From positions 62,001 through 126,000 of IMG/VR virus record IMGVR_UViG_3300045135_002615: DNA of 64,000 bases. The stretch is one strand, 5' to 3'. The notes below the pieces were generated by a model that made no database searches, was not told the origin of the DNA, and was given only the letters and a program-made list of their open reading frames with translations. Both the position numbers and the translations under genes were made by a program. Positions 13,691 to 57,646 of this stretch are shown one piece after another. Position 1 is the stretch's first letter. The number at the start of each line of letters is the position of its first letter.

Positions 13691-14524
13691 TCAGATGACC
13701 TTCACCTTGTAACCCTTACGCATGAGATACTTAACAACACGCTCCTTAAGAGCCTTCATGTGGGTTTTATGCTGGGTCAAGCTGTCTTTGTAGATGTTTC
13801 CGGTGACTGAGATCGTTTGCTTAGAAAGCATGACCCACAGTATAGATGGCGGATAACTAAACGCCTTGTTCGCCAATATGAACCCAAAATGATTATTTGC
13901 ATCTGAGAGCTCAAGCACACCTCCCTGTAGGGCTTTTTTTGCATGAAGATCATCAATAGCCTTATAAATAGCACCCTCTTGACCCAAGGAGGGCTGCCAA
14001 CGTGAGCTAGGGTCAAACCCGTTGCGTACCCTGACCATATAAGGGGAGGACAACTTTGAGACAGTCTTCTCATAAGGCGAAGGACCAAAGAAACCTGCGG
14101 TCTTTTTGACTGAAGAGACACGGAGGGCTTTCTTTAGGGTGAATGCCATGTCTTTGAAAGAGTTAAGGGACGCCTCTTTGGATACCTTAAACTCATATTT
14201 TTCCATGAGCCTTATAACTGCGACAGATAAGTTGCCTCGATTTAACCAAACTGCCCCATTTGTATATTCAATGCTATAGGGCAGTCCCTCGTTAACCGTT
14301 GATTGAGGAGCAACCTTAATAAGGTACCTTATTGCGTCCACTCCCCTTAGCCCCCTTTTATCAATGTCCTTATCTGGACTAGGGACGTAAATGACCTCAT
14401 ATACAGGTAGGTCACCAAGCGTGCTCTCAATATTCTCTTTTCTTCCAAAGATCGCCTCTTTCTCAAGCTCTGCGATACGAGTTTCAAGTTGGGCGATTTT
14501 CTGACTTGCTGTTAAGTGTCTCAT
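13691..14524 (-). CDS. Leader-bearing protein A (277 aa), possibly two tandem related domains
   Basis: Starts MRHLTASQKIAQLETRIAELEKEA; GAAGGAG SD; internal KEAS and KTAG. Confidence 0.8.
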   Translation of the reverse strand: MRHLTASQKIAQLETRIAELEKEAIFGRKENIESTLGDLPVYEVIYVPSPDKDIDKRGLRGVDAIRYLIKVAPQSTVNEGLPYSIEYTNGAVWLNRGNLSVAVIRLMEKYEFKVSKEASLNSFKDMAFTLKKALRVSSVKKTAGFFGPSPYEKTVSKLSSPYMVRVRNGFDPSSRWQPSLGQEGAIYKAIDDLHAKKALQGGVLELSDANNHFGFILANKAFSYPPSILWVMLSKQTISVTGNIYKDSLTQHKTHMKALKERVVKYLMRKGYKVKVI

Positions 14525-14958: not shown

Positions 14959-15439
14959 GCCTATGCTTAGCGATCTCTCTTGCGTTGTTGTCCATCTCAT
15001 GTGAGGTGGGTCCCCCCTCGGTTGTAAAGGGAAAAGATAATATCAGACCAACTACTGAACCGAGCTGACCTGAGCCAAGAAGGAGACCAATGCTACCTGT
15101 TACAGTGACGAGGATTGCAATAATGGCTATCACCGCTATGGTCGCATTACTTAGTTTAAAGGTTTGTCGTAGCGAGAAATAGAAGTGGTCCCAAAGTTTT
15201 TTAAATGATGATCTCTTGGGTGCCTCCTCTAGGATCTGCATGAACTTCTCATCTTTTCGGAGTTGCTTGATCTGCCTAGCTATATCCTCCTCCCTCGCTC
15301 CTTGAGCGACCTCCACCACCGACCGAGGTATCGAGCTCAGCACTTTAGGTAGCTCCTTCAGAAGGCTGAAAATCGCCTCTTTTTCCATTTGAGCAACCTT
15401 AGCATGGGCGACTCTTTGTATCATTGCTTGTCTATTCAT
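14942..15439 (-). CDS. Membrane protein with leader variant (MNRQAMIQRVAHAKVAQMEKEAIF), 165 aa
   Basis: GGAGG SD at the revised start; long hydrophobic segment IAVIAIIAILVTVTGSIGLLLG...VVGLILSF. Confidence 0.75.
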   Translation of the reverse strand: MNRQAMIQRVAHAKVAQMEKEAIFSLLKELPKVLSSIPRSVVEVAQGAREEDIARQIKQLRKDEKFMQILEEAPKRSSFKKLWDHFYFSLRQTFKLSNATIAVIAIIAILVTVTGSIGLLLGSGQLGSVVGLILSFPFTTEGGPTSHEMDNNAREIAKHRLRNSR

Positions 15440-19285: not shown

Positions 19286-19662
19286 ATGAAAATCCCATCC
19301 AACCTCCTGACGTTGGTTTTGTTTTGGAGTTCACGTTTTAACTCACGAGCAACTCTCTTAGGATTTGAGGCATAAGTGAGTTGCAACCAATCAACCCTGA
19401 TTGAAAATGAAGGGTCATTCCTACCAATGACTTCAACTTGCATATCAGCTTCTCTCCCCTGACTGTCAGTCAGCTCATATTTGACGTAGTAACCTCCGTG
19501 GGAATAAGAGTTCTTAAGGTTTATCTGCTCAACCTTATAACCTTCGTCCTCAAACACCTTCTCAATATCCTTTAAATATCTTAGGGGGTGTGCTTTTTTC
19601 TCAAGACGAGCGATACGGGATTCGAGGTGGGCGATTTTCTGACTGGCTGTTAGGTGTCTCAT
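19282..19662 (-). CDS. Leader-bearing protein B (126 aa)
   Basis: Starts MRHLTASQKIAHLESRIARLEKKA; AAAGGAGG SD 6 nt upstream. Confidence 0.8.
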   Translation of the reverse strand: MRHLTASQKIAHLESRIARLEKKAHPLRYLKDIEKVFEDEGYKVEQINLKNSYSHGGYYVKYELTDSQGREADMQVEVIGRNDPSFSIRVDWLQLTYASNPKRVARELKRELQNKTNVRRLDGIFI

Positions 19663-21006: not shown

Positions 21007-21891
21007 ATGAGACACCTAACAGCTAGTCAGAAAATCGCTCAGCTTGAAAACCGTATCGCCCACCTAGAGAAGCAAGCCTTCCTAGAAGGCATCCAACAAA
21101 AAGTCTCAGCTTGGATTGAAGCCAAGCTACCCTATAAGAGAGAAGTGAAGAAGGCAGTTCTTTCTGAGTACTCTATCAGGGACATGAAGAGTGCTGAAAA
21201 AGCAGCTAAATATGTGGTGAGGGATCTTAAAGATCCTCATCACATGACCGCCCTCAGCATGATTGTGAAGTCCGAGTCTACGTTCAAGGGTCGAGTGGAG
21301 ATGGCTCTCAATATTAAGAATCACCCTGAGATGTTTGAGGGGCGTACAGCGTCAGCGTTTGCTGTTGCCGCGTTGAGCGTAACAGCGTTACTTGTGGGTG
21401 TTGTTTGGACCTCGATTAAGCAGGTGTTCCGCCTTGCGTCACACAATAAGCAAGGCGGAATTCCCGTGATCGTGGGTGTCATCATCTCCATTTTGGGAGG
21501 TGTCGCTTTTCATGAGCTTCTTCTGACTCCTGAGAAAAAAACAAAAGAGATTGGGCACGCCATCTCAAGGGGTTTGATCGGTGAGCTCCCCGGAATTAAA
21601 TCAATAGAGAAGGTCTCAGAGAACATGGATGAGGTGGTCATAAAACTTGAGATTGCAGACACAGCAATGAAATACCCTACCGACATAGCTACTTTTTATC
21701 TCACCTTTGATACAACAAAGGATTATGTTTTCGTTGAAAACAGCTACATCAACGGGATAGCAGGGACATATGAAAATGTTTTAAAGAAGCTAGAGTCTCC
21801 AAGAGTTGAGGCTGAGTTGAGAGAAAAAATTAAGATTTGGGAAGATGACGATATTTTTCTTGGGCGAGATGACGATGACATGTCCATATAG
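21007..21891 (+). CDS. Leader-bearing membrane protein C (294 aa, two hydrophobic segments)
   Basis: Starts MRHLTASQKIAQLENRIAHLEKQA; hydrophobic stretches follow RTAS and KQGG. Confidence 0.8.
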   Translation: MRHLTASQKIAQLENRIAHLEKQAFLEGIQQKVSAWIEAKLPYKREVKKAVLSEYSIRDMKSAEKAAKYVVRDLKDPHHMTALSMIVKSESTFKGRVEMALNIKNHPEMFEGRTASAFAVAALSVTALLVGVVWTSIKQVFRLASHNKQGGIPVIVGVIISILGGVAFHELLLTPEKKTKEIGHAISRGLIGELPGIKSIEKVSENMDEVVIKLEIADTAMKYPTDIATFYLTFDTTKDYVFVENSYINGIAGTYENVLKKLESPRVEAELREKIKIWEDDDIFLGRDDDDMSI

Positions 21892-22961: not shown

Positions 22962-24422
22962 ATGGCAAGAACTGACTCCGAGAAAAGAGACATCTACAAG
23001 AAGTGGCATGAGCTGATCAACATGAGTGAAACGGCTCTTAAGTCATGGGCAGAAGATGATGACAGGCTTCTTGCGTCTATCAATAGGCAAGAGGCAAAGT
23101 CTGAAGGGGGTATCCAATCGGGCTATGATTCCTTCCATCGCATAAAAAGGCGTAAAAAAAAGCCTTTTAAGGAATGGTCGGACTCGGATTTCGATAATGC
23201 TAATCAAGAGATAGGCTTCAACTCACGGATGCTAGGAGGCACCCCTGGGAAACCTGTGTCCAATTCAGGGCGATCTAAATGGGAGATCAGTCTTAGGAAT
23301 TGGGGACACGATCCTTCGTTGAAGTCAAGCCCCGCACATAATAAATGGAAGTCATGGAAGAAGAAGCAAGAGGAAACCAACATGAAGAAGTCACACCAAG
23401 TCCGCGTCCTGAAGAGGGCGATTATAGCCACGAGAAACCGCCCTGACCTAGCCCCACAGAGGGAGGAGTACATCCGCCTTTTGAAAGCTCATAATAGCAG
23501 GGTAGCTTCGGGTGACCCTAATAAAGAGTTAGAGAAGCCAGCTAAGAAGCTTGGTTTGTCTAGGAAAGATATGTACGAGGCATGGCTTCCACTTTTAAAA
23601 AAAGTATCGGGTCTTATCAAGCCTGAGTATCAGGTTCAGATTTCCAAGTTCATTTCGAGTTATGGTCTTTTGGGATTCTTCAATGGGCTCTACAAGGACA
23701 CCATGAAGGGTACAATCAAGCCCTCAAATCCCGTTGAAAAATTCCTTGCCTCGATCTTCAAAGGCTTGAGTATCTCAAAGACCGCCGAGATGACCATCCG
23801 TGTCCTCCAAGCGGAGTCCTTGGATGATATTGCCGAGGTCGGTAGAGCACAAGGTCGGGATATGTTGGGAGAGTGGGGTCTAGGAGACGCTAAACTCAAA
23901 AAGCGTATGTATGAGAATAAAGTGGGACGTAACGTCACTTGGGAGGAGTTCGCTGAACAAGTCGAAGATAAAAGGTTGTACACCATGTTGGTGAAGTATC
24001 TAACCTATATTGAGGATTCTAAAATCTTTGGGGTTAAGCTCTTGTTCACCATTGTCAAAGGTGCAGGTGTTGCTTGGTTATTAGGAGGCACTCTCGCAGG
24101 GATTACTTTCGGCGTGGTTGCATTCCTTAAGTTCATTTTTGCTTTGGCGGTGTGCTTCGGTTGGCGTAATGCAGCTCAGTTTCTTCGTAAGACAGGGATT
24201 ATGCTCACCGCACTCGCCCCTTCAGTGCTCATAGACCTTGGGAGGGTCTTAGGACTCCCGTTTGATATATTCCATGGCATTGTAAACAAAGTGAGTCAAG
24301 CCACAGATGCCGTCGTTAACTTCTTCTCGAAGAAGGCGGTACAAGAAATCCGTATGCTACTTAGAGAGGACATGGACTTCCGCAGGGAGTTCTTGATCAC
24401 TCAAAAACGCAGACACATCTAA
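22962..24422 (+). CDS. DUF3140-like domain fused to a helical/membrane protein
   Basis: INMS..AL.SW ... SKWEISLRNWGHDP; hydrophobic C-terminal segments; possible internal start at 23382. Confidence 0.7.
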   Translation: MARTDSEKRDIYKKWHELINMSETALKSWAEDDDRLLASINRQEAKSEGGIQSGYDSFHRIKRRKKKPFKEWSDSDFDNANQEIGFNSRMLGGTPGKPVSNSGRSKWEISLRNWGHDPSLKSSPAHNKWKSWKKKQEETNMKKSHQVRVLKRAIIATRNRPDLAPQREEYIRLLKAHNSRVASGDPNKELEKPAKKLGLSRKDMYEAWLPLLKKVSGLIKPEYQVQISKFISSYGLLGFFNGLYKDTMKGTIKPSNPVEKFLASIFKGLSISKTAEMTIRVLQAESLDDIAEVGRAQGRDMLGEWGLGDAKLKKRMYENKVGRNVTWEEFAEQVEDKRLYTMLVKYLTYIEDSKIFGVKLLFTIVKGAGVAWLLGGTLAGITFGVVAFLKFIFALAVCFGWRNAAQFLRKTGIMLTALAPSVLIDLGRVLGLPFDIFHGIVNKVSQATDAVVNFFSKKAVQEIRMLLREDMDFRREFLITQKRRHI

Positions 24423-24440
24423 TAATCTTTTAATAAGAGC

Positions 24441-24471
24441 ACCCCTCTCGGAGCACCAATCTGAGAGGGGT
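24441..24471 (+). promoter_or_regulatory. 9-bp hairpin covering the SD of the Ntn-hydrolase gene
   Basis: ACCCCTCTC / GAGAGGGGT. Confidence 0.65.
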
Positions 24472-24478
24472 CTGTTAT

Positions 24479-25879
24479 ATGGATAAGAAAGCATGTGTCA
24501 TAGGGGTCACCCATATCAATGGGAAGAAGTACATCTTTAAAAACAGGGACAGGAACTATATCCCTGAGATTAAAGTCTATCATGTGCTGAGCGAGAATGG
24601 TACAGAGATACTCTACTTCAAAGACGAGATATCAGGGTGGGTTGAAGGGATCAATGAGCACGGCATCGTAGTAGCTAATGCCGCCCTCATGGTCTTGGAA
24701 GATGAAAAGGCGGGGCTTAAGAAGGGTAAGAAGGTTAGATTCTCTAAAGATGCTCACCGTATGATCTATGCACTCGACACCAACTCATTGATGGAAGCCC
24801 TACATAGGGTCACCCACTTCAAAACAGGAGTCAAGGGTCATACAACAGTGTCCAACGCTGAACACACCTACGTCATCGAGCGTACAAGTAAACATGATCC
24901 AAAGGTCGAGCTCGTCAATGAACCCCACTTCGTAAGAACCAATCATGGCGTCCACTACCCAGATGCAGGTTATCAAGTAGGTGCTGATAAAGAGTCCTCA
25001 CACACCCGTTATGAGACCGCTATGTCGGTTATGGAGTCAAGGAATAGAAGCCCTTACGACATCGTCAAGAAGTTCTTTAACAAGAGATTGAAAGATGTAC
25101 CCAATCCCAATAATGTAGTCCGTAAGACGGACAATATGTTCACCTCTAATCAGTTCATATTTGAACCCGCTAAGAGGAGGATGAATATGATATTGATCGA
25201 GGACGATTGCGTATTCCTCGGATACGAAAAGCACTTCTCTAAACCCGCTAAGTGCTCCTTCTCTGTGCGTAAAGTCAAGCCTGGTAAAGACGGGAAAGCC
25301 ATGCTTGAAAAGATTGAAGCAAAGCCCATCCAAGTAACACTCCCACCCCCTAATGAGAACGTACTTAGAGTCTTTGCGTATGGCTCGCTCATGTATGAGC
25401 CTGAGCTACCTGATCTAATCTGCGGTCAGAAGGTCTGTCACTTGAACGGTATGAGGCGTGTCTTTAATATTTACTCTCCATCAAGGAAGCATTCAGTCTT
25501 GGGTACTTGCCCTGGCGGTGCCATGCAGGGACTACTCCTTGAGTACCCTATCGAGAACGCTGAAGAAGTCATCAAGGCTCTTGATAAGCGTGAAGGGTTT
25601 AAGGAAGGTGACTCAAACAGCCTATACTTGAGAGAAGTTCGTAGAGCTTACTCCACCGAACACCCTCAAGGTGTTCCTTGTATCGTATACATCACTAATG
25701 AAGAACATGACTCATATGTTGGTCCTCGTGACGATCTGATTCAAGAGACAGTAGAATCTGAAGACCTGCAAGGATACCTAAGAGGTTGTTCAAGGTCGAT
25801 GACAAGCCATGGTGTTGAGGACAAGTACCTTGATCGAATCATACTCAAACTGAAGGAAGACCATAAGGTAAGGATATGA
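24479..25879 (+). CDS. Cys-type Ntn-hydrolase (C45/AAT-like) fused to a ChaC/GGCT-like domain
   Basis: A-C6-VIG...KNRD...EGINEHG...RTNH; C-terminal RVFAYGSLMY...LDKREG. Confidence 0.8.
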   Translation: MDKKACVIGVTHINGKKYIFKNRDRNYIPEIKVYHVLSENGTEILYFKDEISGWVEGINEHGIVVANAALMVLEDEKAGLKKGKKVRFSKDAHRMIYALDTNSLMEALHRVTHFKTGVKGHTTVSNAEHTYVIERTSKHDPKVELVNEPHFVRTNHGVHYPDAGYQVGADKESSHTRYETAMSVMESRNRSPYDIVKKFFNKRLKDVPNPNNVVRKTDNMFTSNQFIFEPAKRRMNMILIEDDCVFLGYEKHFSKPAKCSFSVRKVKPGKDGKAMLEKIEAKPIQVTLPPPNENVLRVFAYGSLMYEPELPDLICGQKVCHLNGMRRVFNIYSPSRKHSVLGTCPGGAMQGLLLEYPIENAEEVIKALDKREGFKEGDSNSLYLREVRRAYSTEHPQGVPCIVYITNEEHDSYVGPRDDLIQETVESEDLQGYLRGCSRSMTSHGVEDKYLDRIILKLKEDHKVRI

Positions 25880-26388
25880 TACAACTCCTCGCTAAGTTGT
25901 TAGGGATTAGAGAGGTCATCGTACCTTCTCCCATCTTCCACCACCATGTAGATGAGCCCCGTAAGTCAGGTCATACATTCTCAACCACCATTGAAGATAC
26001 ATACATGGAGTGGGACGTTGAGACCCTGTGGACACATAGCGAGAGCCTACCTGTTACCCAATGGGAGATACCCGACAGCTTCCTTGAAGAATGGAACTGG
26101 GGGTCAGATCACCCTTCTGAGCATATTGAGAGATGTCTTGAAGCCGACCTCTGTTATCCCATTCTCGTATGGGATGGGATCATCGTAGATGGCTGCCACC
26201 GAGCGGTCAAGTCTATTGCTCTAGGGTTTTCAACGATACCTTGTAAGGTCATTAACACCATGCCTCCCACCAATCACGACATCCATCCCCATGAGGAAGA
26301 GGAAAGCACGGGTAAGTGGACCCACGATGACATGGTTAAGATTTTAAGGGTTGTCTTAGATCAAACCCTCACCCCAAAAGATAAGTAG
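25876..26388 (+). CDS. ParB/sulfiredoxin-like domain protein
   Basis: EADLCYPILV..GIIVDGCHRAVKS; ATGA overlap with the upstream gene. Confidence 0.7.
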   Translation: MIQLLAKLLGIREVIVPSPIFHHHVDEPRKSGHTFSTTIEDTYMEWDVETLWTHSESLPVTQWEIPDSFLEEWNWGSDHPSEHIERCLEADLCYPILVWDGIIVDGCHRAVKSIALGFSTIPCKVINTMPPTNHDIHPHEEEESTGKWTHDDMVKILRVVLDQTLTPKDK

Positions 26389-31428: not shown

Positions 31429-31621
31429 TGGGGTCTACCTTCCTGTTGGCTTGTTGCTCTTTGAGCTGTGTCTGAACTCTCTCAAGGGCATGTATCTGAG
31501 ACTGAACTTGACGAGCTTCCTTCTCATAGTAGTCCTTGAGAGCAATCAAGTTGCTCACAAAGTCCCCTAGCTGAGTACCCTCAAGGTTTGGTCTCTCTGA
31601 CTCACTCTTCCAATCACTCAT
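31421..31621 (-). CDS. Small coiled-coil protein
   Basis: Overlaps neighbours at both ends; heptad pattern. Confidence 0.6.
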   Translation of the reverse strand: MSDWKSESERPNLEGTQLGDFVSNLIALKDYYEKEARQVQSQIHALERVQTQLKEQQANRKVDPNG

Positions 31622-34600
31622 ATGATGTCCTCCAACGCTGTTAGGTCAGGGTTTTGATAGTCGATCCTATCCATGCGAGGTAAAGTACCTGTCACTCGGT
31701 TCGTCCTCGTATTAATCCATGCATACCTCTTACTCCTCATACCCATAGAAGAGATACCATTCCCTATGAGCGTAACCATACCCTCAAAGAGTGTATGCCC
31801 TTGAGCCTCAAGCTGAGGGTCTTCAACAAGTAGCCTACGATCCGTTAAAGACAGCATTGTGTCCGTGTAAGGGTACGGAGGCTCATGCGGCGTCAAAACC
31901 CCAAAAATCAGGTCATTAGATGGGTGTGTGGGGTCGTTCTCACCTACAAGGTAAATAGAGTCTGTCTGCTCATACGCAGCCCATGTCAAAGGTAGAGGCA
32001 CAAGTTGATTAAACAGCCTTACCCTCTCAGACCATGACAATACTCTCTCCCTGAAAAACAACACAACCTCCGCTAAGTTTCGATCAAGCAAGTCTCTCCT
32101 CTTAAGGATGCGATAAGAGAAGGGCTCTATGCTGTCTGAGCTTGTAGTGTATGTCCCATTGTCGATAGGAGAAGTCACCCTCAAAGGGTTCGAGGTGTCC
32201 CCATCTACAGAAGGTAGGAATATCTCATGTGGGTTTGAACTACCTGAGATAAACTCAACCGTCAAAGATGACCCGTCAACACTAATGACCCTATAGGATC
32301 CCCTGTTGTCATCTAAGGTGTTCGGCTGACCCACACCTAATGGTCCATCGCCTTGTGCAGGAGCACCCCTCTCTAATGGGGCACCCTCAAGAGCTCCTTG
32401 AGGGTCTATCACGAGATAATAATCTGAAGGTGTACCCGTGATTAGCTCAGAGAAGTCTACACTAGTGTCTTCAAGAGTATTCTCCGTAGGCACACGAGCT
32501 GTGGAACTATAGATGAGATCAAAACCATGCTCAAGGAACTCGTTGAAGCTCTGCTCTTGGGGGATCAAGTGTGTTCTTGTAGTCACCTTGAAAGATACCA
32601 TGTCACCATTAGGGTCACCCGATAATGAGATGCCTTTAGCTGAACCTGGTGTAGCCTCAACAATCTTCATCTTGAAGACCTCATCACTTGAGCTGTCGTA
32701 CATAGTGATGTAGTCACCAACCTTCAAGGCTTCATCAAAGTCACCCACTTGAGTGTCCTTGCCCCCTAGTGCCTCTACACCAAAGACATCAACCTTCTTA
32801 GAGGTGAGTGTATAGACGCCATCTGTGAAACTAAGATGGTCAACCAAACCTACCTTCTGCTCATAGAGGTTTTTGAGACCAAGTAGTGAGTTCAACATCT
32901 CAAGCATGATGCGAGAGAACCTCCTGAGCCTACGCACCTTGATCGTACTCACCTCTGTGAATGTCCAAGCAGGTAAGTTACCTAACCCAACTTCATCAGC
33001 AAGTGATCTTACTTGAGAAGTCCCATCATTAAACACCTTTGGTGTCGTACCCCTATAGTCTCTCATTAAGCGAGGGAATGCTCGATCAAGATGGATCGCT
33101 GCTTCCGCCGTGATGGTCAGAGTAAAGCTATCATTAGGCGTTAAGAACCCTTGCCCATAGGTGTTCCCTTGAGGCGTGTCTTCTATCGTAGGGAAGATAG
33201 ACTCCCATGAACCGCCTACTAAATTAGATGGGAGTAAGAGAGCTCTCATGATGCCCTCCTCATCCCTCTCAATATAACTCTCATCTACCGTGACGGATAC
33301 GGACAAACCACCCGCTAAGGTGAGGTCAATGGTTAATGGACTAGCTAATGAAGTTGGGACTTCATAAGGGAGCAAGCCTGTAGCCAAGAAGTTAAAAGGA
33401 ACCTTGTGGATGCCACAAACGACTTGACCACCTGACCCAATAACACTGTTCATCTGTTGGTAGGTGAGCTCCTCTACCTGGTTAGAGTCTACGTTGCCAT
33501 AAGTGGGGTTCTCAGTGCCATTGGCGGATGAGAAGGTGAACGTCATCGAACCGCCATTGATCGAGTCATACTTCAAGCGGATGTAAGACCGATAGAACAC
33601 TTCATCGAAGCTATTGTTCTGTGTAGACGCAGGCTGAGTCAGGTAGTTGTCATTCAAGAGGATGATGGCTTCCATCAAGCCCGACCCATTGTAGTAAAGA
33701 CTCAAGTCGCTGCTGTCTGTCACAAGCGTACCTGTACCATCACCATTATCGAGTACCTCCACTACAGTGGGGAACACTACAGGCAAGATATCGCTAGAAC
33801 CAATCTGCTCTGTGTATGTGGCACTTAACGCTGAAGGGGTTATCCTCTTGACTCGATGAACACCCGCGTTGTGACCTCGCTCAATATAGACCAAGTCACC
33901 CTCTTCAACATTAGCTAATGAACCTTCAAAAGACACAAGGTTCGTCAACTCAGCCGGGGCGGAGTCTGTTGTACCTGTTGGGTCAATCCTGCCATATTCA
34001 CCTGAACCAATGAAGATGACCTCTCCATCTCGAACCTCAGCACCTACAAACAAAGACATAGGATCGTTGGTTCGCTCAATGTCAAAGAGACTCCTTACCC
34101 TCAAGGTGTTGGCGTCAATCACATCCCATGCCTCACCTAGTCGAATATGAGAGTATCCGAAACGACTAAAGGCGTTAGCATAAGACTCAATAAGCTGTGT
34201 TCCTATGCCCCCATACTGCCATACGTTCATTAGTGACCCGTAGACATAGAATAGTGGTGTCACATCTAATGGGGCGACACCACCTCCCGCTGCCAATAAC
34301 ACAGAGGGGTCGGTGTCTGATTGTATCCATGTTGTGAAATCAGCATCTGCATCATAGAAGCTCAACCTGTCCGAGAGGACATACGAGTTAGTATTCAACC
34401 CGAACCTCATGTCGATGCGATAGTTCAAGAAGAAGTCAATAGAGAGCGTCCTCGTGTTTACCCCAATATCCGCAGTCACATCGAGGTCGATGAGGTCTGT
34501 CCATAACGTGTTAGTGATCCATGTCTCATAACCATTAAAAGGCCACTGAGGTTCCTCAGCTAAGGTCAACACATTAGGGATAGGTTGTTGGAGTACGCCA

Positions 34601-40347: not shown

Positions 40348-40392
40348 ATCTCTAGCTCCACTCAGATGGTCAGACCATAGACTACCACCCAC

Positions 40393-41270: not shown

Positions 41271-41687
41271 ATGGCTAAACACGCAGAGAGAGAGATGGGC
41301 TTATTGCCTATCATGAATCCGCTATACAACTTGAGAGAGATCTCGAAGCAGATGGCGTTATTGGAGGATCACTTGAATCACCCTCGCAAGAGGTGTCCTG
41401 ATTGTATTAGGAAGCACTTCTTGACGATAGAGGCATTATTTGAGGAGGCGGTATCCTTGGACAAGGAGGGTAAGTATGTGGAGTTGCTTGATGGCAAGGC
41501 ACAGGAGATGAGAGATTTACAGGGGGCGTGGCTTGACGGCAGGGATGGTAGGGATGCGGACAAGGTATATATGGTAATAGCTCAGGGTATCCGTGCGATG
41601 CGTAAGGAGTTTGCCCCTATGTGTTTTGATGTGCGTAAGTTGGCTTCGTTGAGGGTAGCGAGCAGGTATCTTCTTAGGCGGAGGTGA
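41271..41687 (+). CDS. Helical CxxC protein (NLREISKQ..LLEDHL...RCPDCIRKHF)
   Basis: GAGGAG SD; late motif at 41214-41226; basic tail RKLASLRVASRY. Confidence 0.75.
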   Translation: MAKHAEREMGLLPIMNPLYNLREISKQMALLEDHLNHPRKRCPDCIRKHFLTIEALFEEAVSLDKEGKYVELLDGKAQEMRDLQGAWLDGRDGRDADKVYMVIAQGIRAMRKEFAPMCFDVRKLASLRVASRYLLRRR

Positions 41688-41697
41688 GTGGGGTTTC

Positions 41698-42954
41698 TTA
41701 GTATCTTCTTCTTAGGCGAGAATCCTGACGGCTGAACCCTTTAGGGAGGGTAGCACCTGTGAGATCAGCTCCACTGAGGTCTGCTCCACTGAGGCCAGCG
41801 TGACTGAGGCCAGCGTGACTGAGGTCTGCTCCACTGATTTTAGCGTATTCAAGGTCAGCGTGACTGAGGTTAGCATCATTGAGTTTAGCCCCATTGAGTT
41901 CAGCACCATTGAGTTTAGCCCCATTGAGTTCAGCCCCATCGAGTTTAGCCCCTTTGAGGTTAGCTTCACTGAGGTTAGCTTCAATGAGCTGAGCATCATA
42001 GAGTTTAGCTTTAGTGAGGTTAGCACCATTGAGATAAGCTCCTGTGAGATCAGCATAACTGAGGTCAGCCCCACTGAGGTCAGCTCCTGCGAGTTTAGCT
42101 TTAGTGAGGTTAGACCCCATGAGGTAAGCCTTAGTGAGCTTAGCCTTAGTGAGGTTCGCCCCTGTGAGTTTAAACCTAACGAGGTTAGTTCCACTGAGGT
42201 CAGCGTGACTGAGGTTCGCCCCATTGAGTTCAGCCTCATAGAGTTTAGCCCCTGTGAGTTTAGCCCCTGTGAGATCAGCATCTGTGAGATCAGCCCCCTC
42301 AAGGTTGGCTCCACTGAGGTCAGCCTTACTGAGATCTGCATCTGTGAGGTCAGCCTTTCTGAGATCAGCACCCTTGAGGTTAGCGTTATTGAGCTCAGCA
42401 TCTGTGAGATCAGCTTCAGTGAGGTTAGCCCCACTGAGATCAGCCTTACTGAGCTTAGCTCCTATTAGGTCAGCCCCTCTGAGATCAGCATCTGTGAGAT
42501 CAGCCTTACTGAGATCAGCGTTATTGAGATAAGCATCTGTGAGATCAGCCCCTCTGAGATCAGCACCCTTGAGGTTAGCGTTATTGAGCTCAGCGACAGT
42601 GAGATCTGCATCAGTGAGATCTGCATCAGTGAGGTCAGCCTTTGTGAGGTTAGCCCCTCTGAGGTTAGCCCCTCTGAGCTTAGCCCCAATGAGCTTAGCC
42701 CCAATGAGATCAGCCTTACTGAGCTCAGCCTCACTGAGATCAGTCCAACTGAGATCAACACCACTGAGATCAGTCCAACTGAGGTCAAGACCACTGAGGT
42801 CTTGACCTGAGAAGTCTTTCTCCCCCTTAGCGAGTGCCTCCACTAGGGACTCCCTAGTGTGCTTAAGATTGCCCTTTAGGGAGGCTTGCTTCTCTAGATG
42901 AGAGATACGGTTTTCGATTTGAGCGATTTTTTGACTGGTTGTTAAGTGTCTCAT
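41698..42954 (-). CDS. Pentapeptide-repeat protein carrying the conserved leader (protein D)
   Basis: About 70 A(D/N/K/E)Lxx repeats after MRHLTTSQKIAQIENRISHLEKQA. Confidence 0.95.
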   Translation of the reverse strand: MRHLTTSQKIAQIENRISHLEKQASLKGNLKHTRESLVEALAKGEKDFSGQDLSGLDLSWTDLSGVDLSWTDLSEAELSKADLIGAKLIGAKLRGANLRGANLTKADLTDADLTDADLTVAELNNANLKGADLRGADLTDAYLNNADLSKADLTDADLRGADLIGAKLSKADLSGANLTEADLTDAELNNANLKGADLRKADLTDADLSKADLSGANLEGADLTDADLTGAKLTGAKLYEAELNGANLSHADLSGTNLVRFKLTGANLTKAKLTKAYLMGSNLTKAKLAGADLSGADLSYADLTGAYLNGANLTKAKLYDAQLIEANLSEANLKGAKLDGAELNGAKLNGAELNGAKLNDANLSHADLEYAKISGADLSHAGLSHAGLSGADLSGADLTGATLPKGFSRQDSRLRRRY

Positions 42955-43400: not shown

Positions 43401-43811
43401 TTAATCCTTCTTAAGGAACTTGACTTGGTGGGTTGCAGGCTTGTTAGGCAACCTGTTGAGGAGTTGGTCCACCTCAGCTTGAGGGGCTTCCTTATAGAGA
43501 GCCCATCTGAGGTTGCGGCTCTCGGCAATGTACTTCTCATAGAGATCAATGCCGAGTGCTTCAATGAGTTGATCCCTTGACAGCCCCTCTAGGGAGACCG
43601 AGGGTCGTTGAGGTACAACGAGAGCCTTTGAGCGGATACCATTAAAGGTAATGGTCTCTTGTCCGTCACCTGTGTGGTCAATGAGCTCTTGTTTAAAGTC
43701 CCGTACAATGTCTTGAGCGAGGTGGCTGAGATACCACAGCTTAGAAGCGGCATCAATGCGGTGCTCAAGAGGTGCGTTCGTGTCTTGCACGATGTCAAAG
43801 AGATAGTTCAT
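43401..43811 (-). CDS. Hypothetical protein
   Basis: GGAGG SD; ATGA overlap with the upstream gene. Confidence 0.7.
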   Translation of the reverse strand: MNYLFDIVQDTNAPLEHRIDAASKLWYLSHLAQDIVRDFKQELIDHTGDGQETITFNGIRSKALVVPQRPSVSLEGLSRDQLIEALGIDLYEKYIAESRNLRWALYKEAPQAEVDQLLNRLPNKPATHQVKFLKKD

Positions 43812-44374
43812 GTCACCACCTCCCACTCATGGTACCACCTTGTCCTTGAAGTGCGATTTGTTGTCGCTGCGACCACAGGACCAAGTGATAGGGTAACCTC
43901 ATACTGAGCCCCACTCTTAGCCCCTTTGATAGTGACCTTCGAGCCCACGGGGATCGTCTCTAAGTTGTCAAAGAACGCCTTGACTGAGGCGAGTTCATTT
44001 TTTTCAGGGATGCGGTACTTGAGCTTTTTGAGCTCAACACGCCGCGTGTGTTTTGCAGGTTGGTTAGGGTGCCCTAAAACAACTAGGTCATCTTCCTTAT
44101 GGAGAATGAAGAAGTCCATACCCTTGAGGTACCCACTCGTCACAGAGACAGGTGTACCTACTTCAAGGGGTAGATTCTTGTAGTAGTCCTTAATCTCTTT
44201 GACCACCTTCCTCACAGGCTTGGGGTCATGGTAGGTGGTAGCCACATCAAGGCTGATACCACACAGAGGTTGCTCAACTAAGTCAATGTCATATCCATCA
44301 GGGTTGGTGCCGTTCATGGCGTAGTAGTTGATGCAGATCTGCTCCGCGAGGAGCTTGTTCTTGTTAAAGTCCAT
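43808..44374 (-). CDS. Paralog 3 of a tandem family (conserved N-cap plus SH3/KOW-like barrels)
   Basis: MDFNKNKLLAEQICINYYAMNGTNPDGYD...KEIKDYYKNLPLEVGT. Confidence 0.75.
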   Translation of the reverse strand: MDFNKNKLLAEQICINYYAMNGTNPDGYDIDLVEQPLCGISLDVATTYHDPKPVRKVVKEIKDYYKNLPLEVGTPVSVTSGYLKGMDFFILHKEDDLVVLGHPNQPAKHTRRVELKKLKYRIPEKNELASVKAFFDNLETIPVGSKVTIKGAKSGAQYEVTLSLGPVVAATTNRTSRTRWYHEWEVVT

Positions 44375-45530: not shown

Positions 45531-45541
45531 GTTCATTCTCC

Positions 45542-54385: not shown

Positions 54386-55810
54386 ATGGATACACTAGTT
54401 AAGCTTGCCACCTTAGAAGAGAGATTTGGGTTAGAGAGCAAGGGGGGTTCTTTAGAAGCCAGGATAGCGAGTCTTGAGAGTTTTGCCGTAACTAAGTTAG
54501 CGGGGCGTGTTGCGATAGAGGTGGGGAAGAAGGTTCCGAGTGAGGTGCAAGGTGTTTTGGGGAAGGGTTTAAGGGATGAGTTTGGTGTGAGTAGCTTAGA
54601 TGGTTTAGCATCTAATCTAGAAGCAATCCGCATTGGCTTACAGGACTCTAAGAACAAAGAGGTAGCGGACTATGTGAGGAAGCAGAGTAATACTTTAAGG
54701 GGTCAGGTAGAGCTATTACTTGAGTTGAAGAGTTCGGACAGGGTGGGCAGTTTTAAGAACTATTTCTTTGGTTTCTCAATACCTTTAGTGATCATGCTTT
54801 TGGTCATGTCGTTGTTTTCTCAGATGACGTTCTTCCAGTTGCTTTTAAGTTTTGGGGGTCACATTGTAGAGAACTTTTTTGTGATCGTAGTGGGTGGGGT
54901 ATGTGTGGTAAAGGTAGCTCAGTTCTTAATGTGGGTCTCGGACAAGATCGAAAAGTTTGAAAAGGCTGTCTTTGGATTTTGGAAGCCAAAACCAAAGAAG
55001 AAGAGGAGGAGGAGGAGGGCTACCAAAGAGGCGAGGGCGTTAGAGACCTTGAACAAGGTGGTGGAGTTCTTACCGTTGGTGAGCCGTTTGAAGGGAGCGG
55101 GTAAGGAGCTTTTACGTTTAGTGGGTAGTTCATTTCAGGACTTGGTGAGCACGTTTGAGCTAATGGTAAGGAAGGACAAGTGGAAGATACTTGAGGCGTT
55201 GAAGAAGAACTTTGACTCTCAGATGTCGAATGCTTTTCAGACATTTACGTCAGTGAAGGAGCCTCCGAAGTTGAAGGAGATAAACTTTGAGAAGCTTTTA
55301 GACTCGGTGTATGAGCATAAGGGGGAGAAGTTCAAGTTGAGGGAGTTATTGGAGGCGGATTCGATAGTGGGTCAGGGGGCATATACGACGTACAATAGTT
55401 GGGTAATGGAGTACGGGTATATCTTAGATCATGCTTTGGGTCGTCCTGCGAAGATGACGGGTAAGCAAGAGAGGGATTTATTAAAGAAGGGTGCGAGTGC
55501 TTTGAAGAGAGCATCGAACACATTCTACAGGTTCTTAGGTTTATGGTTGAAGGCAACTTCGCAGTCGGCGTTGGTGACTTCATTGTGGGTATCCGTAACG
55601 GCGATGTCATTAGCTTATGGTGGGAAGGTCATATTAAGGAAGCTGGTAGACATGTTTAACTCAAAGGTGACGGAGGAGATTAAGGAAGACAAGGGTGGTC
55701 CGATGTCTGAGTTATTCACGCCATCAAGAGTAGCGAGTAGGGGAGGTCATACGTTAGTGTTAGTGAATGAGTATCTTGAGTGTTTGAACTACATAGAGGG
55801 TAGGGTCTAG
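54386..55810 (+). CDS. Membrane protein with doubled RhxxhE leader variant
   Basis: KLATLEERFG...KGGSLEARIASLE; hydrophobic segments; late motif at 54327-54339. Confidence 0.75.
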   Translation: MDTLVKLATLEERFGLESKGGSLEARIASLESFAVTKLAGRVAIEVGKKVPSEVQGVLGKGLRDEFGVSSLDGLASNLEAIRIGLQDSKNKEVADYVRKQSNTLRGQVELLLELKSSDRVGSFKNYFFGFSIPLVIMLLVMSLFSQMTFFQLLLSFGGHIVENFFVIVVGGVCVVKVAQFLMWVSDKIEKFEKAVFGFWKPKPKKKRRRRRATKEARALETLNKVVEFLPLVSRLKGAGKELLRLVGSSFQDLVSTFELMVRKDKWKILEALKKNFDSQMSNAFQTFTSVKEPPKLKEINFEKLLDSVYEHKGEKFKLRELLEADSIVGQGAYTTYNSWVMEYGYILDHALGRPAKMTGKQERDLLKKGASALKRASNTFYRFLGLWLKATSQSALVTSLWVSVTAMSLAYGGKVILRKLVDMFNSKVTEEIKEDKGGPMSELFTPSRVASRGGHTLVLVNEYLECLNYIEGRV

Positions 55811-55812
55811 GT

Positions 55813-56880
55813 TTATCTTTTCTTCTTGTTTGAGGGCTTCTTCTTGGTCGAGGGCTTCTTTGGAGTATTCTTTTTGAGCTCTTTAGGGATAGCTTTAACT
55901 ACGGGGTCTTGTGTTCCGAGTTGGGTTTCAGCTTGGACTACCGCACCATCTACGAGCATTTGTGGTCCAGAGAGCATCTTGTATAGCCCTTTGCCGATCA
56001 TATGCAAAAACTTAAGGACCATCTTAAGAGGTGTTTCCACGAAGAGCTTACCGGGTAGTCGTTGAGTTTTGAACACACCCCATGAGATAAGCATGAGGAC
56101 ATAGTAAATGACGACAGCAACACCTAAGAATTTCAGGGTTGTGAAAAAGGAGATATGACCTCCGAGCCAACCAAGAAGTGTCATGATTGCGGAACCTATA
56201 GCGTTAATAGCAGTGAACAAACCTCCCCACGCCAAACCTACCGCCTTAGCCATTCCAATATATGCCGCATTGGAAGTGATTGATGTGGGTAGTATGAAGT
56301 TAAAGAGCCACCCTGCTCCCACACCAATGTAATAAACAATTTGTGTGGCAATCCATCCGGACCACCCAAGTGCCGAAACCATATATGCCCATAGGATGTT
56401 AGAGGACTTCTCCATAGAGCCTGTCTTCATAAACTCAGGCATCACCCCTGTCTTATTGACCCACAGTGATTTATCATCGCGGACGTACCATAGTAGAACA
56501 ACGGTCATCGTTTCGGGGGCGACATCTACAATCTTCGCCATCTCTTCAATTTTCTTATTCTTGAAGGCTACTTGGAACGAACCTACGATGTTGCTCGCCT
56601 CTTCGGGTGTTTTTACTTTTGAGAGCCTATCACTCAACATCTTCTGTATAGGGTCGTCTCGATCAACCTTAGCTTTGGTCATTTGAGAGAGGCTCATTTT
56701 ATGAGAAGAGAAGAGGTCTTGGATGCCTTTGAGGGCGGTCCCCGAAATACCTTTTCTTATCTTTAGTGCTTCATTAACAACGACAGCCTTAGTGACCTTC
56801 TCCTTAAGATCATCAACTATGCCTGCTCGCTTTTGCATCTTAGCGAGATGTAGACTTGCGACACGTTTTGAGTTAGCCAT
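55813..56880 (-). CDS. Multi-TM protein with leader variant MANSKRVASLHLAKMQKRAG
   Basis: GAGGAG SD; long hydrophobic region after KTGS. Confidence 0.75.
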   Translation of the reverse strand: MANSKRVASLHLAKMQKRAGIVDDLKEKVTKAVVVNEALKIRKGISGTALKGIQDLFSSHKMSLSQMTKAKVDRDDPIQKMLSDRLSKVKTPEEASNIVGSFQVAFKNKKIEEMAKIVDVAPETMTVVLLWYVRDDKSLWVNKTGVMPEFMKTGSMEKSSNILWAYMVSALGWSGWIATQIVYYIGVGAGWLFNFILPTSITSNAAYIGMAKAVGLAWGGLFTAINAIGSAIMTLLGWLGGHISFFTTLKFLGVAVVIYYVLMLISWGVFKTQRLPGKLFVETPLKMVLKFLHMIGKGLYKMLSGPQMLVDGAVVQAETQLGTQDPVVKAIPKELKKNTPKKPSTKKKPSNKKKR

Positions 56881-56968: not shown

Positions 56969-57646
56969 ATGGAACATAGAATCGCATCATTAGAGAGAAG
57001 ACTTGGGGTCACACCCTCAAGAGGTGCAAGCCTTAATGTGAGACTTGCAAACCTTGAGGAGTTAGCCACTGATAAGGCATCTAATCAGATAGAGCGTATC
57101 GCTCAGAAGAAGTTGCCCACTGAGGCTAAGAGAGTGGCTCAAATCGTTTTGGGTAAAGAGATGGGCATTACAAGCTATGCGGGCTTCAAATCGAAGGCAG
57201 CACAGATTTACAAAGAGGTGCAGAAAGCTGAGACAAAGAAGATTGGGCAGAGGATCATCAGGGCACACCCGAACGATTTAAAGGCTCAGTTCCGTATGGC
57301 GATTGGTCTCAATCTCTCAGAGGGCAAGCAGGCGGGCTTTGGGAGCAACTTTGTCTTAGGGGTTACAGTTACAGCGGTGCTGTTGTATCTAGTAATGGTT
57401 GCCATTGCGGACACGATTACTGCCTTTGGTCTAATATGGCTTCTCCCTAATATTCTTGGAGAGATGTCACTCTTACTCCTTGCTGGAGGCTTGGTTTTTG
57501 GGGTGATGGGTTCCGTGTTCTCATGGCTCATCAACTTGAAAAAAAGCCGTCAAGCTTCGCTCAAGTTGATGGGTCAAGAAGTCGTGACGAGGAAGAAGTC
57601 TCTAGGTAAAGAGCTTTTAGAGACTTTATTCGATCTACTCTCATAA
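56969..57646 (+). CDS. Membrane protein, N-terminus paralogous to 54386..55810
   Basis: RIASLERRLG..SRGASL.VRLANLE; hydrophobic block between KQAG and RQAS. Confidence 0.75.
   Translation: MEHRIASLERRLGVTPSRGASLNVRLANLEELATDKASNQIERIAQKKLPTEAKRVAQIVLGKEMGITSYAGFKSKAAQIYKEVQKAETKKIGQRIIRAHPNDLKAQFRMAIGLNLSEGKQAGFGSNFVLGVTVTAVLLYLVMVAIADTITAFGLIWLLPNILGEMSLLLLAGGLVFGVMGSVFSWLINLKKSRQASLKLMGQEVVTRKKSLGKELLETLFDLLS

What the first reader, a model, noticed from the sequence alone, without database searches (positions are those of the whole stretch)
24479..24520. K/R-x-A motif as a probable maturation-protease site; it sits directly before the Ntn-hydrolase nucleophile
Seen: the leader always ends K-x-A. 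The same K/R-x-(A/G)-(S/G) pattern recurs at domain borders of late proteins: KEAS and KTAG (protein A); RTAS and KQGG (protein C, each just before a hydrophobic segment); RVAS and KTAE (22962); KQAG and RQAS (56969, flanking the TM block); KRAG and KTGS (55813); KMAS (12289); KRA (28064). The Ntn-hydrolase begins MDKKA-C. Established: Cys-type Ntn hydrolases work only after the Cys becomes the N-terminus. Established: phiKZ-like and T4 head proteases process many head proteins at short consensus motifs, with Glu at P1. Inference: cleavage after K/R-x-A, a different specificity, strips leaders, splits polyproteins and activates this enzyme. Alternatively the Ntn enzyme autocleaves here and may itself recognise the motif.
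Basis: partly seen in the sequence, partly recalled or inferred. Interest (0 to 1): 0.85.

Follow-up and report, generated by a model that had tools for sequence, protein, structure and literature searches.

The report
Conserved cleavage-like motif before enzyme's catalytic cysteine
In this uncultured giant phage, a short K/R-x-A motif ends a shared protein leader and also sits directly before the cysteine that an Ntn-hydrolase enzyme must expose to work. It therefore looks like a processing site of a new specificity, but cleavage has not been shown.

Summary
ORF 24479-25879 starts MDKKA-C and is an Ntn hydrolase (C45/AAT type) fused to a ChaC-like gamma-glutamyl cyclotransferase. Cys6 is invariant and opens the first strand.

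Among 159 distinct homologue N-termini, the residues before the Cys fall into three classes only:
- [K/R]-x-[A/S/G]|C: 95 sequences, P3 always K or R.
- [L/I/V/F]-x-E|C: 46 sequences.
- M|C: 18 sequences.

The Glu class matches the T4 gp21-type cleavage motif. Those phages encode a Peptidase_S77 protease, and neighbouring proteins carry leaders with the same ending.

The K/R-x-A class occurs only in phages carrying the M-R-x-x-A-S-…-R-[I/V]-A-x-L-E-K-x-A leader seen on four window proteins. About three quarters of 44 such leaders end [K/R]-x-[A/S/G].

In the window, [KR]-x-A is enriched 1.4-fold while mirror and offset controls are not. [KR]-x-A-[SG] is enriched 4-fold in genes with the late promoter-like motif.

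Best reading (about 0.55): a phage maturation protease cuts after K/R-x-A, strips leaders and unmasks the nucleophile. Autoprocessing remains a serious rival.

The split between the K/R-x-A and Glu classes is a single phylogenetic event. No protease was found in the 94 kb of the phage's own contig that I read. Cleavage at internal sites is unproven.

The parts
24479..24493 (+). Five-residue propeptide M-D-K-K-A, with P3 = Lys and P1 = Ala, directly before the nucleophile
   Evidence: Homologues show [K/R]-x-[A/S/G] at this place in 95 of 95 sequences of this class.
24494..24496 (+). TGT codon for Cys6, the predicted N-terminal nucleophile
   Evidence: Invariant in the 48-sequence alignment and in 159 unique N-termini. 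The first beta strand starts at residue 7. In 18 homologues it directly follows the initiator Met.
24494..25210 (+). Ntn-hydrolase domain (C45/AAT-like), residues about 6-244
   Evidence: Pfam PF03417 at 3e-10. Foldseek matches 2x1c/2x1d/2x1e, 3gvz, bile-salt hydrolases and penicillin V acylase. Invariant K21 R23 D24 R25 Y27 N155 H156.
25358..25741 (+). ChaC/GGACT-like gamma-glutamyl cyclotransferase domain, residues about 294-421
   Evidence: Pfam PF04752 at 1.7e-7 and PF06094 at 7.6e-6, both above cut-off. Foldseek matches human ChaC2 6ky1 at 2.7e-9. phrog_2520 also matches.
21007..21078 (+). 24-aa leader MRHLTASQKIAQLENRIAHLEKQA on a 294-aa membrane protein
   Evidence: Leader HMM E 1e-15. 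Homology to other leader proteins stops after K-Q-A.
19591..19662 (-). Leader MRHLTASQKIAHLESRIARLEKKA on a 126-aa protein
14453..14524 (-).
42883..42954 (-). Leader MRHLTTSQKIAQIENRISHLEKQA on a 418-aa pentapeptide-repeat protein
15374..15439 (-). Variant leader MNRQAMIQRVAHAKVAQMEKEA on a membrane protein
56821..56880 (-). N-terminus MANSKRVASLHLAKMQKRAG, with an R-V-A-S box followed by K-R-A. It is the same type as the long leaders on Ntn homologues of other phages.
   Evidence: Compare HRIASAHIASMTREA|C and YRRVASRFISKHA|C.
54386..54520 (+). N-terminal 45 residues with four [KR]-x-A copies: KLA, RIA, KLA, RVA
   Evidence: The whole protein has 12 copies against 4.5 expected.
56969..57148 (+). 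N-terminal 60 residues with five [KR]-x-A copies: RIA, RGA, RLA, RIA, RVA
   Evidence: The whole protein has 9 copies against 3.1 expected.
22962..24422 (+). Upstream partner gene with a DUF3140-like N-domain and C-terminal membrane segments. It is conserved next to the Ntn gene and fused to it in some phages.
25876..26388 (+). Downstream partner gene (phrog_17560), conserved in relatives

Best explanation
The tripeptide [K/R]-x-[A/S/G] is most likely the recognition site of a phage-encoded maturation protease of this giant-phage lineage, and the protease cuts after it.

Such cleavage would do two things. First, it would remove a shared amphipathic N-terminal leader of about 23 residues (M-R-x-x-A-S-x-x-I-x-x-L-E-x-R-[I/V]-A-x-L-E-K-x-A). 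That leader sits on diverse late proteins and probably acts as a targeting signal, as the T4 capsid-targeting sequence does. Second, on the Ntn-hydrolase/ChaC fusion, it would remove the five-residue propeptide MDKKA. Cys6 would then become the free N-terminal nucleophile and the enzyme would switch on.

Shown: the motif, its conservation, its enrichment, the fold and the invariant Cys.

Inferred: that cleavage happens in trans, that the enzyme responsible is the head protease, and that the leader is a packaging signal.
For: 1. Three discrete classes. 159 unique homologue N-termini fall into three classes with no exception.
- P1 = A/S/G goes with P3 = K (68) or R (27).
- P1 = E goes with P3 = L, I, V or F (46 of 46).
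- The rest are M|C (18).
P2 and P4 vary freely within each class.

2. Minimal propeptides keep only the motif: M-x-K-x-A, M-I-N-E, M-L-N-E. No arbitrary extension is seen.

3. The Glu class fits a known protease.
- It matches the I/L-x-E sites of T4 gp21, for example Alt cut at ITE-6 (PMC5694885).
- Locus L047 (…ILGE|C) encodes a Peptidase_S77 protease (Pfam 6.4e-28; phrog_207 7.6e-52) beside a major head protein.
- Its neighbours carry leaders ending …LIGE|Q, …LLGE|I and …LVGE|V.
- The authors of the paper on cultured Chryseobacterium phage MA9V-1 annotated a prohead core serine protease in it (PMC10537231). The Ntn gene of its sister phage MA9V-2 reads …FINE|C, and MA9V-1 carries the same homologue.

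4. Leaders co-occur with the K/R-x-A class. R-[I/V]-A leaders are found in 47 of 884 ORFs of K/R-x-A-class loci. They are found in 1 of 536 ORFs in Glu-class loci and 0 of 132 in Met-class loci. About 33 of 44 distinct leaders end [K/R]-x-[A/S/G], and similarity stops there.

5. Some Ntn homologues carry the leader box themselves, followed by the motif: HRIASAHIASMTREA|C, YRRVASRFISKHA|C.

6. A candidate protease exists in one sub-group. In the sub-group whose Ntn gene carries such a leader and lies in the head-gene module (example contigs are binned with Actinobacteria), there is a family of about 480 aa with a prohead-protease-like predicted fold. BFVD Foldseek gives E 1e-5 to 1e-12 against annotated prohead proteases. 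It has conserved [K/R]-x-A-[S/T] at residue about 26 (34 of 43 sequences) and about 415 (38 of 43). These positions flank the protease-like domain, where self-processing sites are usually found.

7. Window statistics. [KR].A is enriched 1.41x with flat controls. [KR].A[SG] is enriched 4.2x in late-motif genes against 1.3x elsewhere. The motif is about three times denser in the first 45 residues.
Against: - No cleavage is observed. There is no proteomic or biochemical evidence for any member.
- C45 enzymes such as isopenicillin-N acyltransferase are autoprocessing, and short propeptides are removed autocatalytically in penicillin V acylase. A trans protease is therefore not required.
- On a tree of 184 domains the K/R-x-A class is a single clade. 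The contrast with the Glu class is one event, not repeated co-variation.
- The window enzyme has no targeting leader, so its access to a prohead-confined protease is unexplained.
- No protease was found in the 94 kb of the phage's own contig that I could read.
- The candidate protease family was found only in that one sub-group and gave no PDB match.
- About a quarter of leaders lack the terminal motif.
Confidence: 0.55

Rival explanations
1. Autoprocessing. The Ntn domain cleaves its own K-x-A|C bond in cis, as C45, penicillin V acylase and ceramidase-type enzymes do. The resemblance to the leader ends is either coincidence or reflects a separate event.
For: The NCBIfam family that partly matches is named for autoproteolysis. 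The closest structures include the autoprocessing precursor 2x1c and the penicillin V acylase precursor 2iwm. The window enzyme has no targeting leader. The M|C class arose four or five times, so the domain folds and works without help.
Against: Autoprocessing gives no reason for two exclusive P3/P1 patterns: basic with small, or aliphatic with Glu, 141 of 141. It gives no reason for each pattern to equal the leader ending in the same genomes. It also gives no reason for the Glu pattern to equal the S77 protease motif. Active-site residues are invariant across both classes.
Confidence: 0.27
2. The Ntn hydrolase is itself the leader peptidase. It autoactivates at K-x-A|C and then cuts other proteins after K/R-x-A.
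For: Its own site has the same motif as the leader ends. In locus L003 the gene lies between the portal gene and a putative major capsid gene, with several other genes in between. Proteases often sit in that region.
Against: The same enzyme family is kept in phages that have no such leaders and that carry their own S77 protease. It is fused to unrelated effector-like domains: ChaC, topoisomerase IB, RNA ligase and an ADP-ribosyltransferase-like domain. Its structural relatives act on small amides.
Confidence: 0.06
3. Most K/R-x-A copies, above all the internal ones, are structural and not cleavage sites. They reflect the repeat pattern of an amphipathic helix in the leaders and basic residues flanking membrane segments. 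Only the pre-Cys bond is cut.
For: The leader is a heptad-like repeat, K-I-A-x-L-E-x / R-I-A-x-L-E-K. Many motif-rich proteins carry membrane blocks. 28% of [KR].A[SG] sites in those proteins lie within 12 residues of a hydrophobic block, against 9% of all K/R. Cargo regions barely align between phages, so site conservation could be tested in only one pair.
Against: Mirror and shifted motifs are not enriched. The enrichment persists outside leaders. Both R-x-A-S sites around the first membrane segment of ORF 21001 are kept in a homologue with 28% identity.
Confidence: 0.45

Closest known systems
T4 capsid-targeting sequences and gp21 (Peptidase_S77) processing of internal proteins and Alt
   Same: Short N-terminal leaders of 6-20 aa sit on diverse cargo. 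They end in a three-residue motif after which the prohead protease cuts. An enzyme (Alt) is among the substrates. The sister class of the Ntn family carries exactly this I/L-x-E ending and lives in S77-encoding phages.
   Different: In the window the motif is basic-x-small instead of aliphatic-x-Glu. The leader is a 23-aa coiled-coil-like helix. Here the cut would create a catalytic N-terminus, not merely trim a tag. No S77 protease was found in the window.
Giant-phage prohead proteases (phiKZ gp175, SPN3US gp245; Peptidase_S80), motif S/A/G-x-E or A-x-E
   Same: Many head and ejection proteins are processed. Propeptides contain several motif copies. The protease processes itself.
   Different: P1 is Glu in all characterised cases. 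Here P1 would be Ala, Ser or Gly, with an obligatory basic P3.
Autoprocessing Cys-Ntn hydrolases: isopenicillin-N acyltransferase (C45) and penicillin V acylase; bile-salt hydrolase (Met removal only)
   Same: They share the fold, the N-terminal Cys nucleophile and the need to remove what precedes it. The M|C class of the family behaves like bile-salt hydrolase.
   Different: Known members need no foreign protease and show no conserved P3. The NCBIfam C45_proenzyme score is below its cut-off (48 against 85). The long pro-region of isopenicillin-N acyltransferase is absent.
Herpesvirus assemblin and HK97-type prohead proteases (from general knowledge, not tested here)
   Same: These are capsid maturation serine proteases of the same virus lineage. 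Assemblin cuts at (V/L)-x-A|S, with a small residue at P1. The candidate protease of about 480 aa resembles prohead proteases in predicted fold.
   Different: An obligatory basic P3 is not described for them. The link between the candidate protease and the motif is inferred only.

Membership tests
Ntn hydrolase, C45/AAT family (PF03417) | Family profile match above the curated threshold | tested here: met
   PF03417 E 3e-10, 40.6 bits against cut-off 23.2, residues 15-239.
Ntn hydrolase, C45/AAT family (PF03417) | Four-layer alpha-beta-beta-alpha fold shared with solved members | tested here: met
   The model (pLDDT 90.4) matches 2x1c/2x1d/2x1e at E about 1e-7, 3gvz, bile-salt hydrolases and penicillin V acylase.
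Ntn hydrolase, C45/AAT family (PF03417) | Invariant nucleophile (Cys) at the start of the first strand, exposed as the N-terminus | tested here: met
   Cys6 is invariant. The strand starts at residue 7. Cys directly follows Met in 18 homologues. Actual exposure was not tested.
Ntn hydrolase, C45/AAT family (PF03417) | Autoproteolytic activation of the proenzyme | not testable with these tools
   This needs expression of the precursor. NCBIfam C45_proenzyme scores 48.1 bits, below its cut-off of 85, and covers only model positions 128-313.
ChaC / gamma-glutamyl cyclotransferase (PF04752, PF06094) | Profile match above threshold and shared fold | tested here: met
   31.9 bits against 21 and 26.9 bits against 22.8. 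Foldseek matches ChaC2 6ky1 at 2.7e-9 and GGCT 3cry.
ChaC / gamma-glutamyl cyclotransferase (PF04752, PF06094) | Substrate-binding YGSL motif and catalytic Glu | tested here: inconclusive
   AYGSL (residues 300-304) and LDKREG (368-373) are read directly. Their equivalence to the family's catalytic positions rests on my recollection and was not aligned to a solved structure.
Substrates of T4-type (S77) or phiKZ-type (S80) prohead proteases | Cleavage motif with Glu at P1 (I/L-x-E or S/A/G-x-E) | tested here: not met
   The window has K-K-A before the Cys and K-x-A at the leader ends. The Glu motif is found only in the sister class.
Substrates of T4-type (S77) or phiKZ-type (S80) prohead proteases | Such a protease is encoded by the same genome | tested here: inconclusive
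   None was found in the window or in contig positions 42.6-136.4 kb. About 200 kb of the 296.6-kb contig was not read.
Capsid-targeting leader or propeptide system (functional class) | One N-terminal peptide shared by unrelated cargo proteins, under selection at protein level | tested here: met
   Four window proteins and 44 distinct proteins in relatives carry it. Synonymous differences occur in the leader DNA.
Capsid-targeting leader or propeptide system (functional class) | Cargo present in virions with the leader removed | not testable with these tools
   No cultured relative carries the leader. A tblastn search of the phage collection found only a chance-level match in P1 Pro.

The most novel reading that the evidence does not exclude
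A lineage of giant phages uses a maturation protease with a specificity not described for phages: basic P3 and small P1. One of its substrates is an Ntn-hydrolase zymogen whose catalytic N-terminus is created by that foreign protease rather than by autoprocessing. Across phage lineages the pro-motif of this enzyme has been rewritten to fit whichever protease the phage has: K/R-x-A, I/L-x-E, or none. This would tie the activity of an injected or late metabolic enzyme (a gamma-glutamyl amidase/cyclotransferase) to virion maturation.
Probability: 0.45. Interest if true: 0.8.

Novelty: new variant of a known kind. Interest (0 to 1): 0.62.

Why it matters
If correct, the finding does four things.

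1. It gives a simple sequence rule for mature protein ends in a large uncultured group of giant phages: cut after K/R-x-A/S/G. That helps annotate virion and ejected proteins.

2. It defines a portable leader of about 23 residues that may direct cargo into these capsids, in the way the T4 targeting sequence has been used for protein packaging.

3. It would be the first case known to me of an Ntn hydrolase whose nucleophile is unmasked by another protease. That adds a way of keeping an enzyme silent until virion assembly.

4. It offers a cultured test system. The Chryseobacterium phages MA9V-1 and MA9V-2 carry the Glu-class version of the enzyme.

If autoprocessing is the answer, the finding reduces to an ordinary proenzyme plus an unexplained conserved leader ending.

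Tried and rejected
1. Phage P1 Pro. The leader gave a 65%-identical match inside P1 Pro that also ends L-E-K-T-A. It is at chance level (E = 4). P1 cuts its capsid protein after Glu120 (PMC9024508). I dropped it as evidence.

2. Near-identical DNA in cultured phages: none. The nearest genome by DNA polymerase, LR745208.1, lacks both the leaders and the Ntn gene in the 45 kb I read.

3. Sequence search of solved structures, with the single protein and with a profile, found nothing relevant. Only the fold comparison worked.

4. A PHROG scan of ten MA9V-2 candidate head genes found no protease. I used the published MA9V-1 annotation instead.

5. Search for the window phage's own protease.
- Exact-protein look-ups failed because the contig is not in that collection.
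- Walking the IMG/VR contig gave replication genes to the right.
- To the left it gave tail-fibre and baseplate giants, then an intein-bearing helicase.
- An iterative search with the S77 protease and a profile of the 480-aa family found nothing in the window.

6. The 480-aa family first looked like a capsid protein because of its high conservation. Its invariant His, Ser and Cys residues and its BFVD matches point to a protease. The PDB search gave no match, so this stays tentative.

7. Repeated co-variation between motif class and phage type. The tree shows one switch only between K/R-x-A and Glu, so I do not claim it.

8. Literature searches on polyvalent proteins and jumbo phages found no mention of this enzyme, leader or motif.
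Full report
**What is there.** The window is part of a 296,642-bp uncultured giant-phage contig, IMGVR_UViG_3300045135_002615. The window corresponds to contig positions 62,001-126,000. No similar DNA exists among cultured phages. The window carries T4-like baseplate genes, a family A DNA polymerase and many late-looking genes of unknown function.

ORF 24479-25879 begins ATG GAT AAG AAA GCA TGT, that is M-D-K-K-A-C. It has two domains.
- Residues 15-239 match Pfam AAT/C45 (3e-10, above threshold).
- Residues 298-418 match ChaC and GGACT, both above threshold.

An AlphaFold model built on 48 homologues has mean pLDDT 90.4. It matches human ChaC2 and the precursor and mature forms of isopenicillin-N acyltransferase. 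It also matches protein CV2077, bile-salt hydrolases and penicillin V acylase. Cys6 is invariant, together with K21, R23, D24, R25, Y27, N155 and H156. The first strand starts at residue 7.

**The pre-Cys residues across the family.** I collected 120 database homologues and 80 IMG/VR loci, most from contigs of 50-375 kb. This gave 159 distinct mature N-termini, which fall into three classes with no exception.

| Class | Sequences | P1 | P3 |
|---|---|---|---|
| [K/R]-x-[A/S/G]\|C | 95 | A 68, S 24, G 3 | K 68, R 27 |
| [L/I/V/F]-x-E\|C | 46 | E 46 | L 23, I 18, V 4, F 1 |
| M\|C | 18 | Met only | – |

P2 and P4 vary widely in both motif classes. The shortest propeptides retain only the motif: M-x-K-x-A, M-I-N-E, M-L-N-E.

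Longer forms carry leaders or whole domains upstream but keep the same last three residues. Examples are HRIASAHIASMTREA|C, YRRVASRFISKHA|C and …TASRIASRIASRFMAKRA|C. Fusions of the DUF3140-like upstream protein end …KKMKKEA|C.

A basic P3 in internal positions, often as Arg, argues against a mere translation-start effect of Lys codons.

**The Glu class.** T4 gp21 and the giant-phage proteases cut after Glu. T4 Alt loses six residues at I-T-E and a C-terminal piece at L-T-E. T4 targeting sequences are 10-20 residues long (PMC5694885).
- Locus L047 has an Ntn gene that reads M-N-N-L-F-D-K-I-M-L-G-E|C. It encodes a Peptidase_S77 protease 7 kb away (Pfam 6.4e-28; phrog_207 7.6e-52), next to a major head protein and the large terminase.
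- Neighbouring genes in these loci have N-termini ending the same way: …L-I-G-E|Q on an 846-aa protein, …L-L-G-E|I and …L-V-G-E|V. In a second group they end M-K-L-K-x-L-I-L-E|G and …L-I-I-E|V.
- Another Glu-class contig has T4-type gp32, UvsX-like, DnaB and family B polymerase genes.
- The cultured Chryseobacterium phage MA9V-2 has …F-I-N-E|C. Its sister MA9V-1, which carries the same Ntn homologue, has a gene that its authors annotated as a prohead core protein serine protease (PMC10537231).

In this class the propeptide therefore looks like an ordinary substrate tag of the resident head protease.

**The K/R-x-A class and the leader.** Four window proteins start with M-R-H-L-T-A-S-Q-K-I-A-x-L-E-x-R-I-A-x-L-E-K-x-A, and a fifth has a variant ending M-E-K-E-A. 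The leader DNA shows synonymous differences, so selection acts on the peptide.

In loci of the K/R-x-A class I found 44 distinct proteins with this leader. Their cargo is unrelated: pentapeptide-repeat proteins, membrane proteins and small soluble proteins. About 33 of the 44 end [K/R]-x-[A/S/G], and similarity stops there. The exceptions end L-E-R-Q-M, L-E-N-L-T-A, L-E-Q-G-G-S and similar.

N-termini with an R-[I/V]-A box occur in 47 of 884 ORFs in K/R-x-A-class loci. They occur in 1 of 536 ORFs in Glu-class loci and 0 of 132 in Met-class loci. The set of P1 residues at leader ends (A, S, rarely G) is the same as before the Cys.

**Statistics in the window.**

| Motif | Gene set | Observed | Expected | Note |
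|---|---|---|---|---|
| [KR].A | all 64 genes | 203 | 144 | z 5.5 |
| [KR].AS | all 64 genes | 26 | 10.3 | |
| [KR].A[SG] | 16 late-motif genes | 21 | 5.0 | |
| [KR].A[SG] | other 48 genes | 21 | 15.8 | |
| [KR].A[SG] | late-motif genes, first 45 aa removed | 15 | 3.9 | |

- Expected counts come from shuffling each protein.
- Control motifs are not enriched: A.[KR] 0.98x, [KR]..A 0.74x, [DE].A 0.92x, [KR].S 0.91x, [KR].G 1.04x.
- The motif is about three times denser in the first 45 residues. ORFs 54386 and 56969 have four and five copies there. This is what multi-site propeptides look like in SPN3US.

One caution applies. Many of these proteins have membrane segments. 28% of the sites in them lie next to a hydrophobic block, against 9% of all K/R. 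Part of the signal may therefore be ordinary membrane-flank chemistry. Only one homologous pair could be aligned well enough to check site conservation; both R-x-A-S sites were kept.

**A candidate protease.** One sub-group of the K/R-x-A class carries long R-[I/V]-A leaders on its Ntn gene (loci L003, L029-L031, L036-L037; example contigs are binned with Actinobacteria). There the Ntn gene lies in the head-gene module, after the terminase and portal genes.

About 8 kb downstream lies a very conserved family of about 480 aa with more than 1,200 members. It has invariant His, Ser and Cys residues.
- Language-model neighbours include S78 and S77 prohead proteases, at lead level only.
- The model is of moderate quality (pLDDT 70.9). 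It matches many predicted structures annotated as prohead proteases in BFVD, at E 1e-5 to 1e-12. It matches nothing in the PDB.
- The family has conserved [K/R]-x-A-[S/T] sites at residue about 26 (34 of 43 sequences) and about 415 (38 of 43). These flank the protease-like domain, where self-processing sites usually lie.

This fits the model but is circumstantial. The family was not seen in the window.

**Limits.**
- On a tree of 184 Ntn domains the K/R-x-A class is one clade. The tree needs only one change between it and the Glu class, and four or five changes between Glu and Met-only. The class contrast is therefore a single event.
- The independent evidence is the long-term constancy of P3 and P1 inside each clade. 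Added to this is the match of each motif to the leaders, and in one case to the protease, of the same genomes.
- I could not find the window phage's protease. Of its contig I read 42.6-136.4 kb. The flanks hold replication genes on one side and tail-fibre-like giants plus a helicase on the other.
- The window enzyme has no leader, so how it would meet a prohead-confined protease is open. Its conserved neighbours, one of which is fused to it in other phages, may matter.

The most likely mechanism is trans-cleavage after [K/R]-x-[A/S/G] by a phage maturation protease, which removes leaders and unmasks Cys6 (about 0.55). Autoprocessing of the Ntn domain is the main rival (about 0.27). The idea that the Ntn enzyme is itself the leader peptidase is unlikely, because the enzyme persists in phages without such leaders. 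The claim that internal sites split polyproteins is not established.

I found no description of this leader, motif or enzyme in the searchable literature.

The enzyme's substrate is unknown. A gamma-glutamyl compound such as glutathione is a reasonable guess from the ChaC domain, and because isopenicillin-N acyltransferase acts on an aminoadipyl amide.

Noticed in passing
window 24441-24471: A hairpin with a 12-bp stem lies between ORF 22962-24422 and the Ntn gene. The likely ribosome-binding purines (GAGAGGGG) sit in its 3' arm, 8 nt before the ATG. It could be a terminator or a translational control element.
   Followed up: partly
window 22962-26388; L006 7785-11253; L007 8543-12003: A three-gene cassette is conserved: a DUF3140-like protein with C-terminal membrane segments, the Ntn/ChaC enzyme, and a phrog_17560 protein. 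In several phages the DUF3140-like or a DUF5661-like N-domain is fused directly upstream of the K-x-A|C site.
   Followed up: partly
window 41698-42954 (-); L006 448-7237, 11780-12724, 14423-17997: Pentapeptide-repeat proteins, possibly DNA mimics, carry the leader. One relative has at least five leader-bearing copies and three leaderless ones in 18 kb.
   Followed up: no
window, 35-45 nt upstream of 14524, 19662, 21007, 42954 and about a dozen other starts: A conserved T-rich element ([C/T]TTTAT[A/T], for example GTTCTTTTATCG and GTTACTTTATATC) precedes leader genes and other late-looking genes. It resembles a late promoter.
   Followed up: partly
homologues P0068, P0074, P0080, P0082, P0086, P0100, P0064, P0083: In other phages the Ntn domain is the N-terminal module of long proteins. 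Its C-terminal partners include topoisomerase IB, RNA ligase, poly(A) polymerase-like nucleotidyltransferase, Ham1, an ADP-ribosyltransferase-like domain and SWIM. This architecture recalls polyvalent proteins.
   Followed up: no
window 41271-41687 (+), C-terminus: This protein ends …KLASLRVASRYLLRRR. The same R-V-A-S-R-Y-L box opens the leader of Ntn homologue P0086 (MRSDRVASRYLQSRIRTA|C). The box is therefore not strictly N-terminal.
   Followed up: no
window 43808-45536 (-): Three tandem paralogues of 188, 196 and 191 aa share the segment AEQICINY[YF]AM[NH]GT.PDGYDIDLV. They have no family match.
   Followed up: no
L003 645-4853 and 15783-18482; L121 18676-20889: Inteins interrupt the large terminase and the candidate prohead protease of one relative. 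A SNF2-type helicase left of the window on the phage's own contig also looks intein-bearing.
   Followed up: no
L002 2320-3339 (phage P1 pro): P1 Pro residues about 230-252 (RHLEAMAKIADAEARIALLEKTA) resemble the leader and end K-T-A. The match is at chance level (E = 4), and P1 cuts after Glu.
   Followed up: yes
window 31618-40392 (-): A 2,924-aa ORF has no PHROG match. It is depleted in the motif, with 2 [KR].[AG][SG] sites against 6.7 expected.
   Followed up: no
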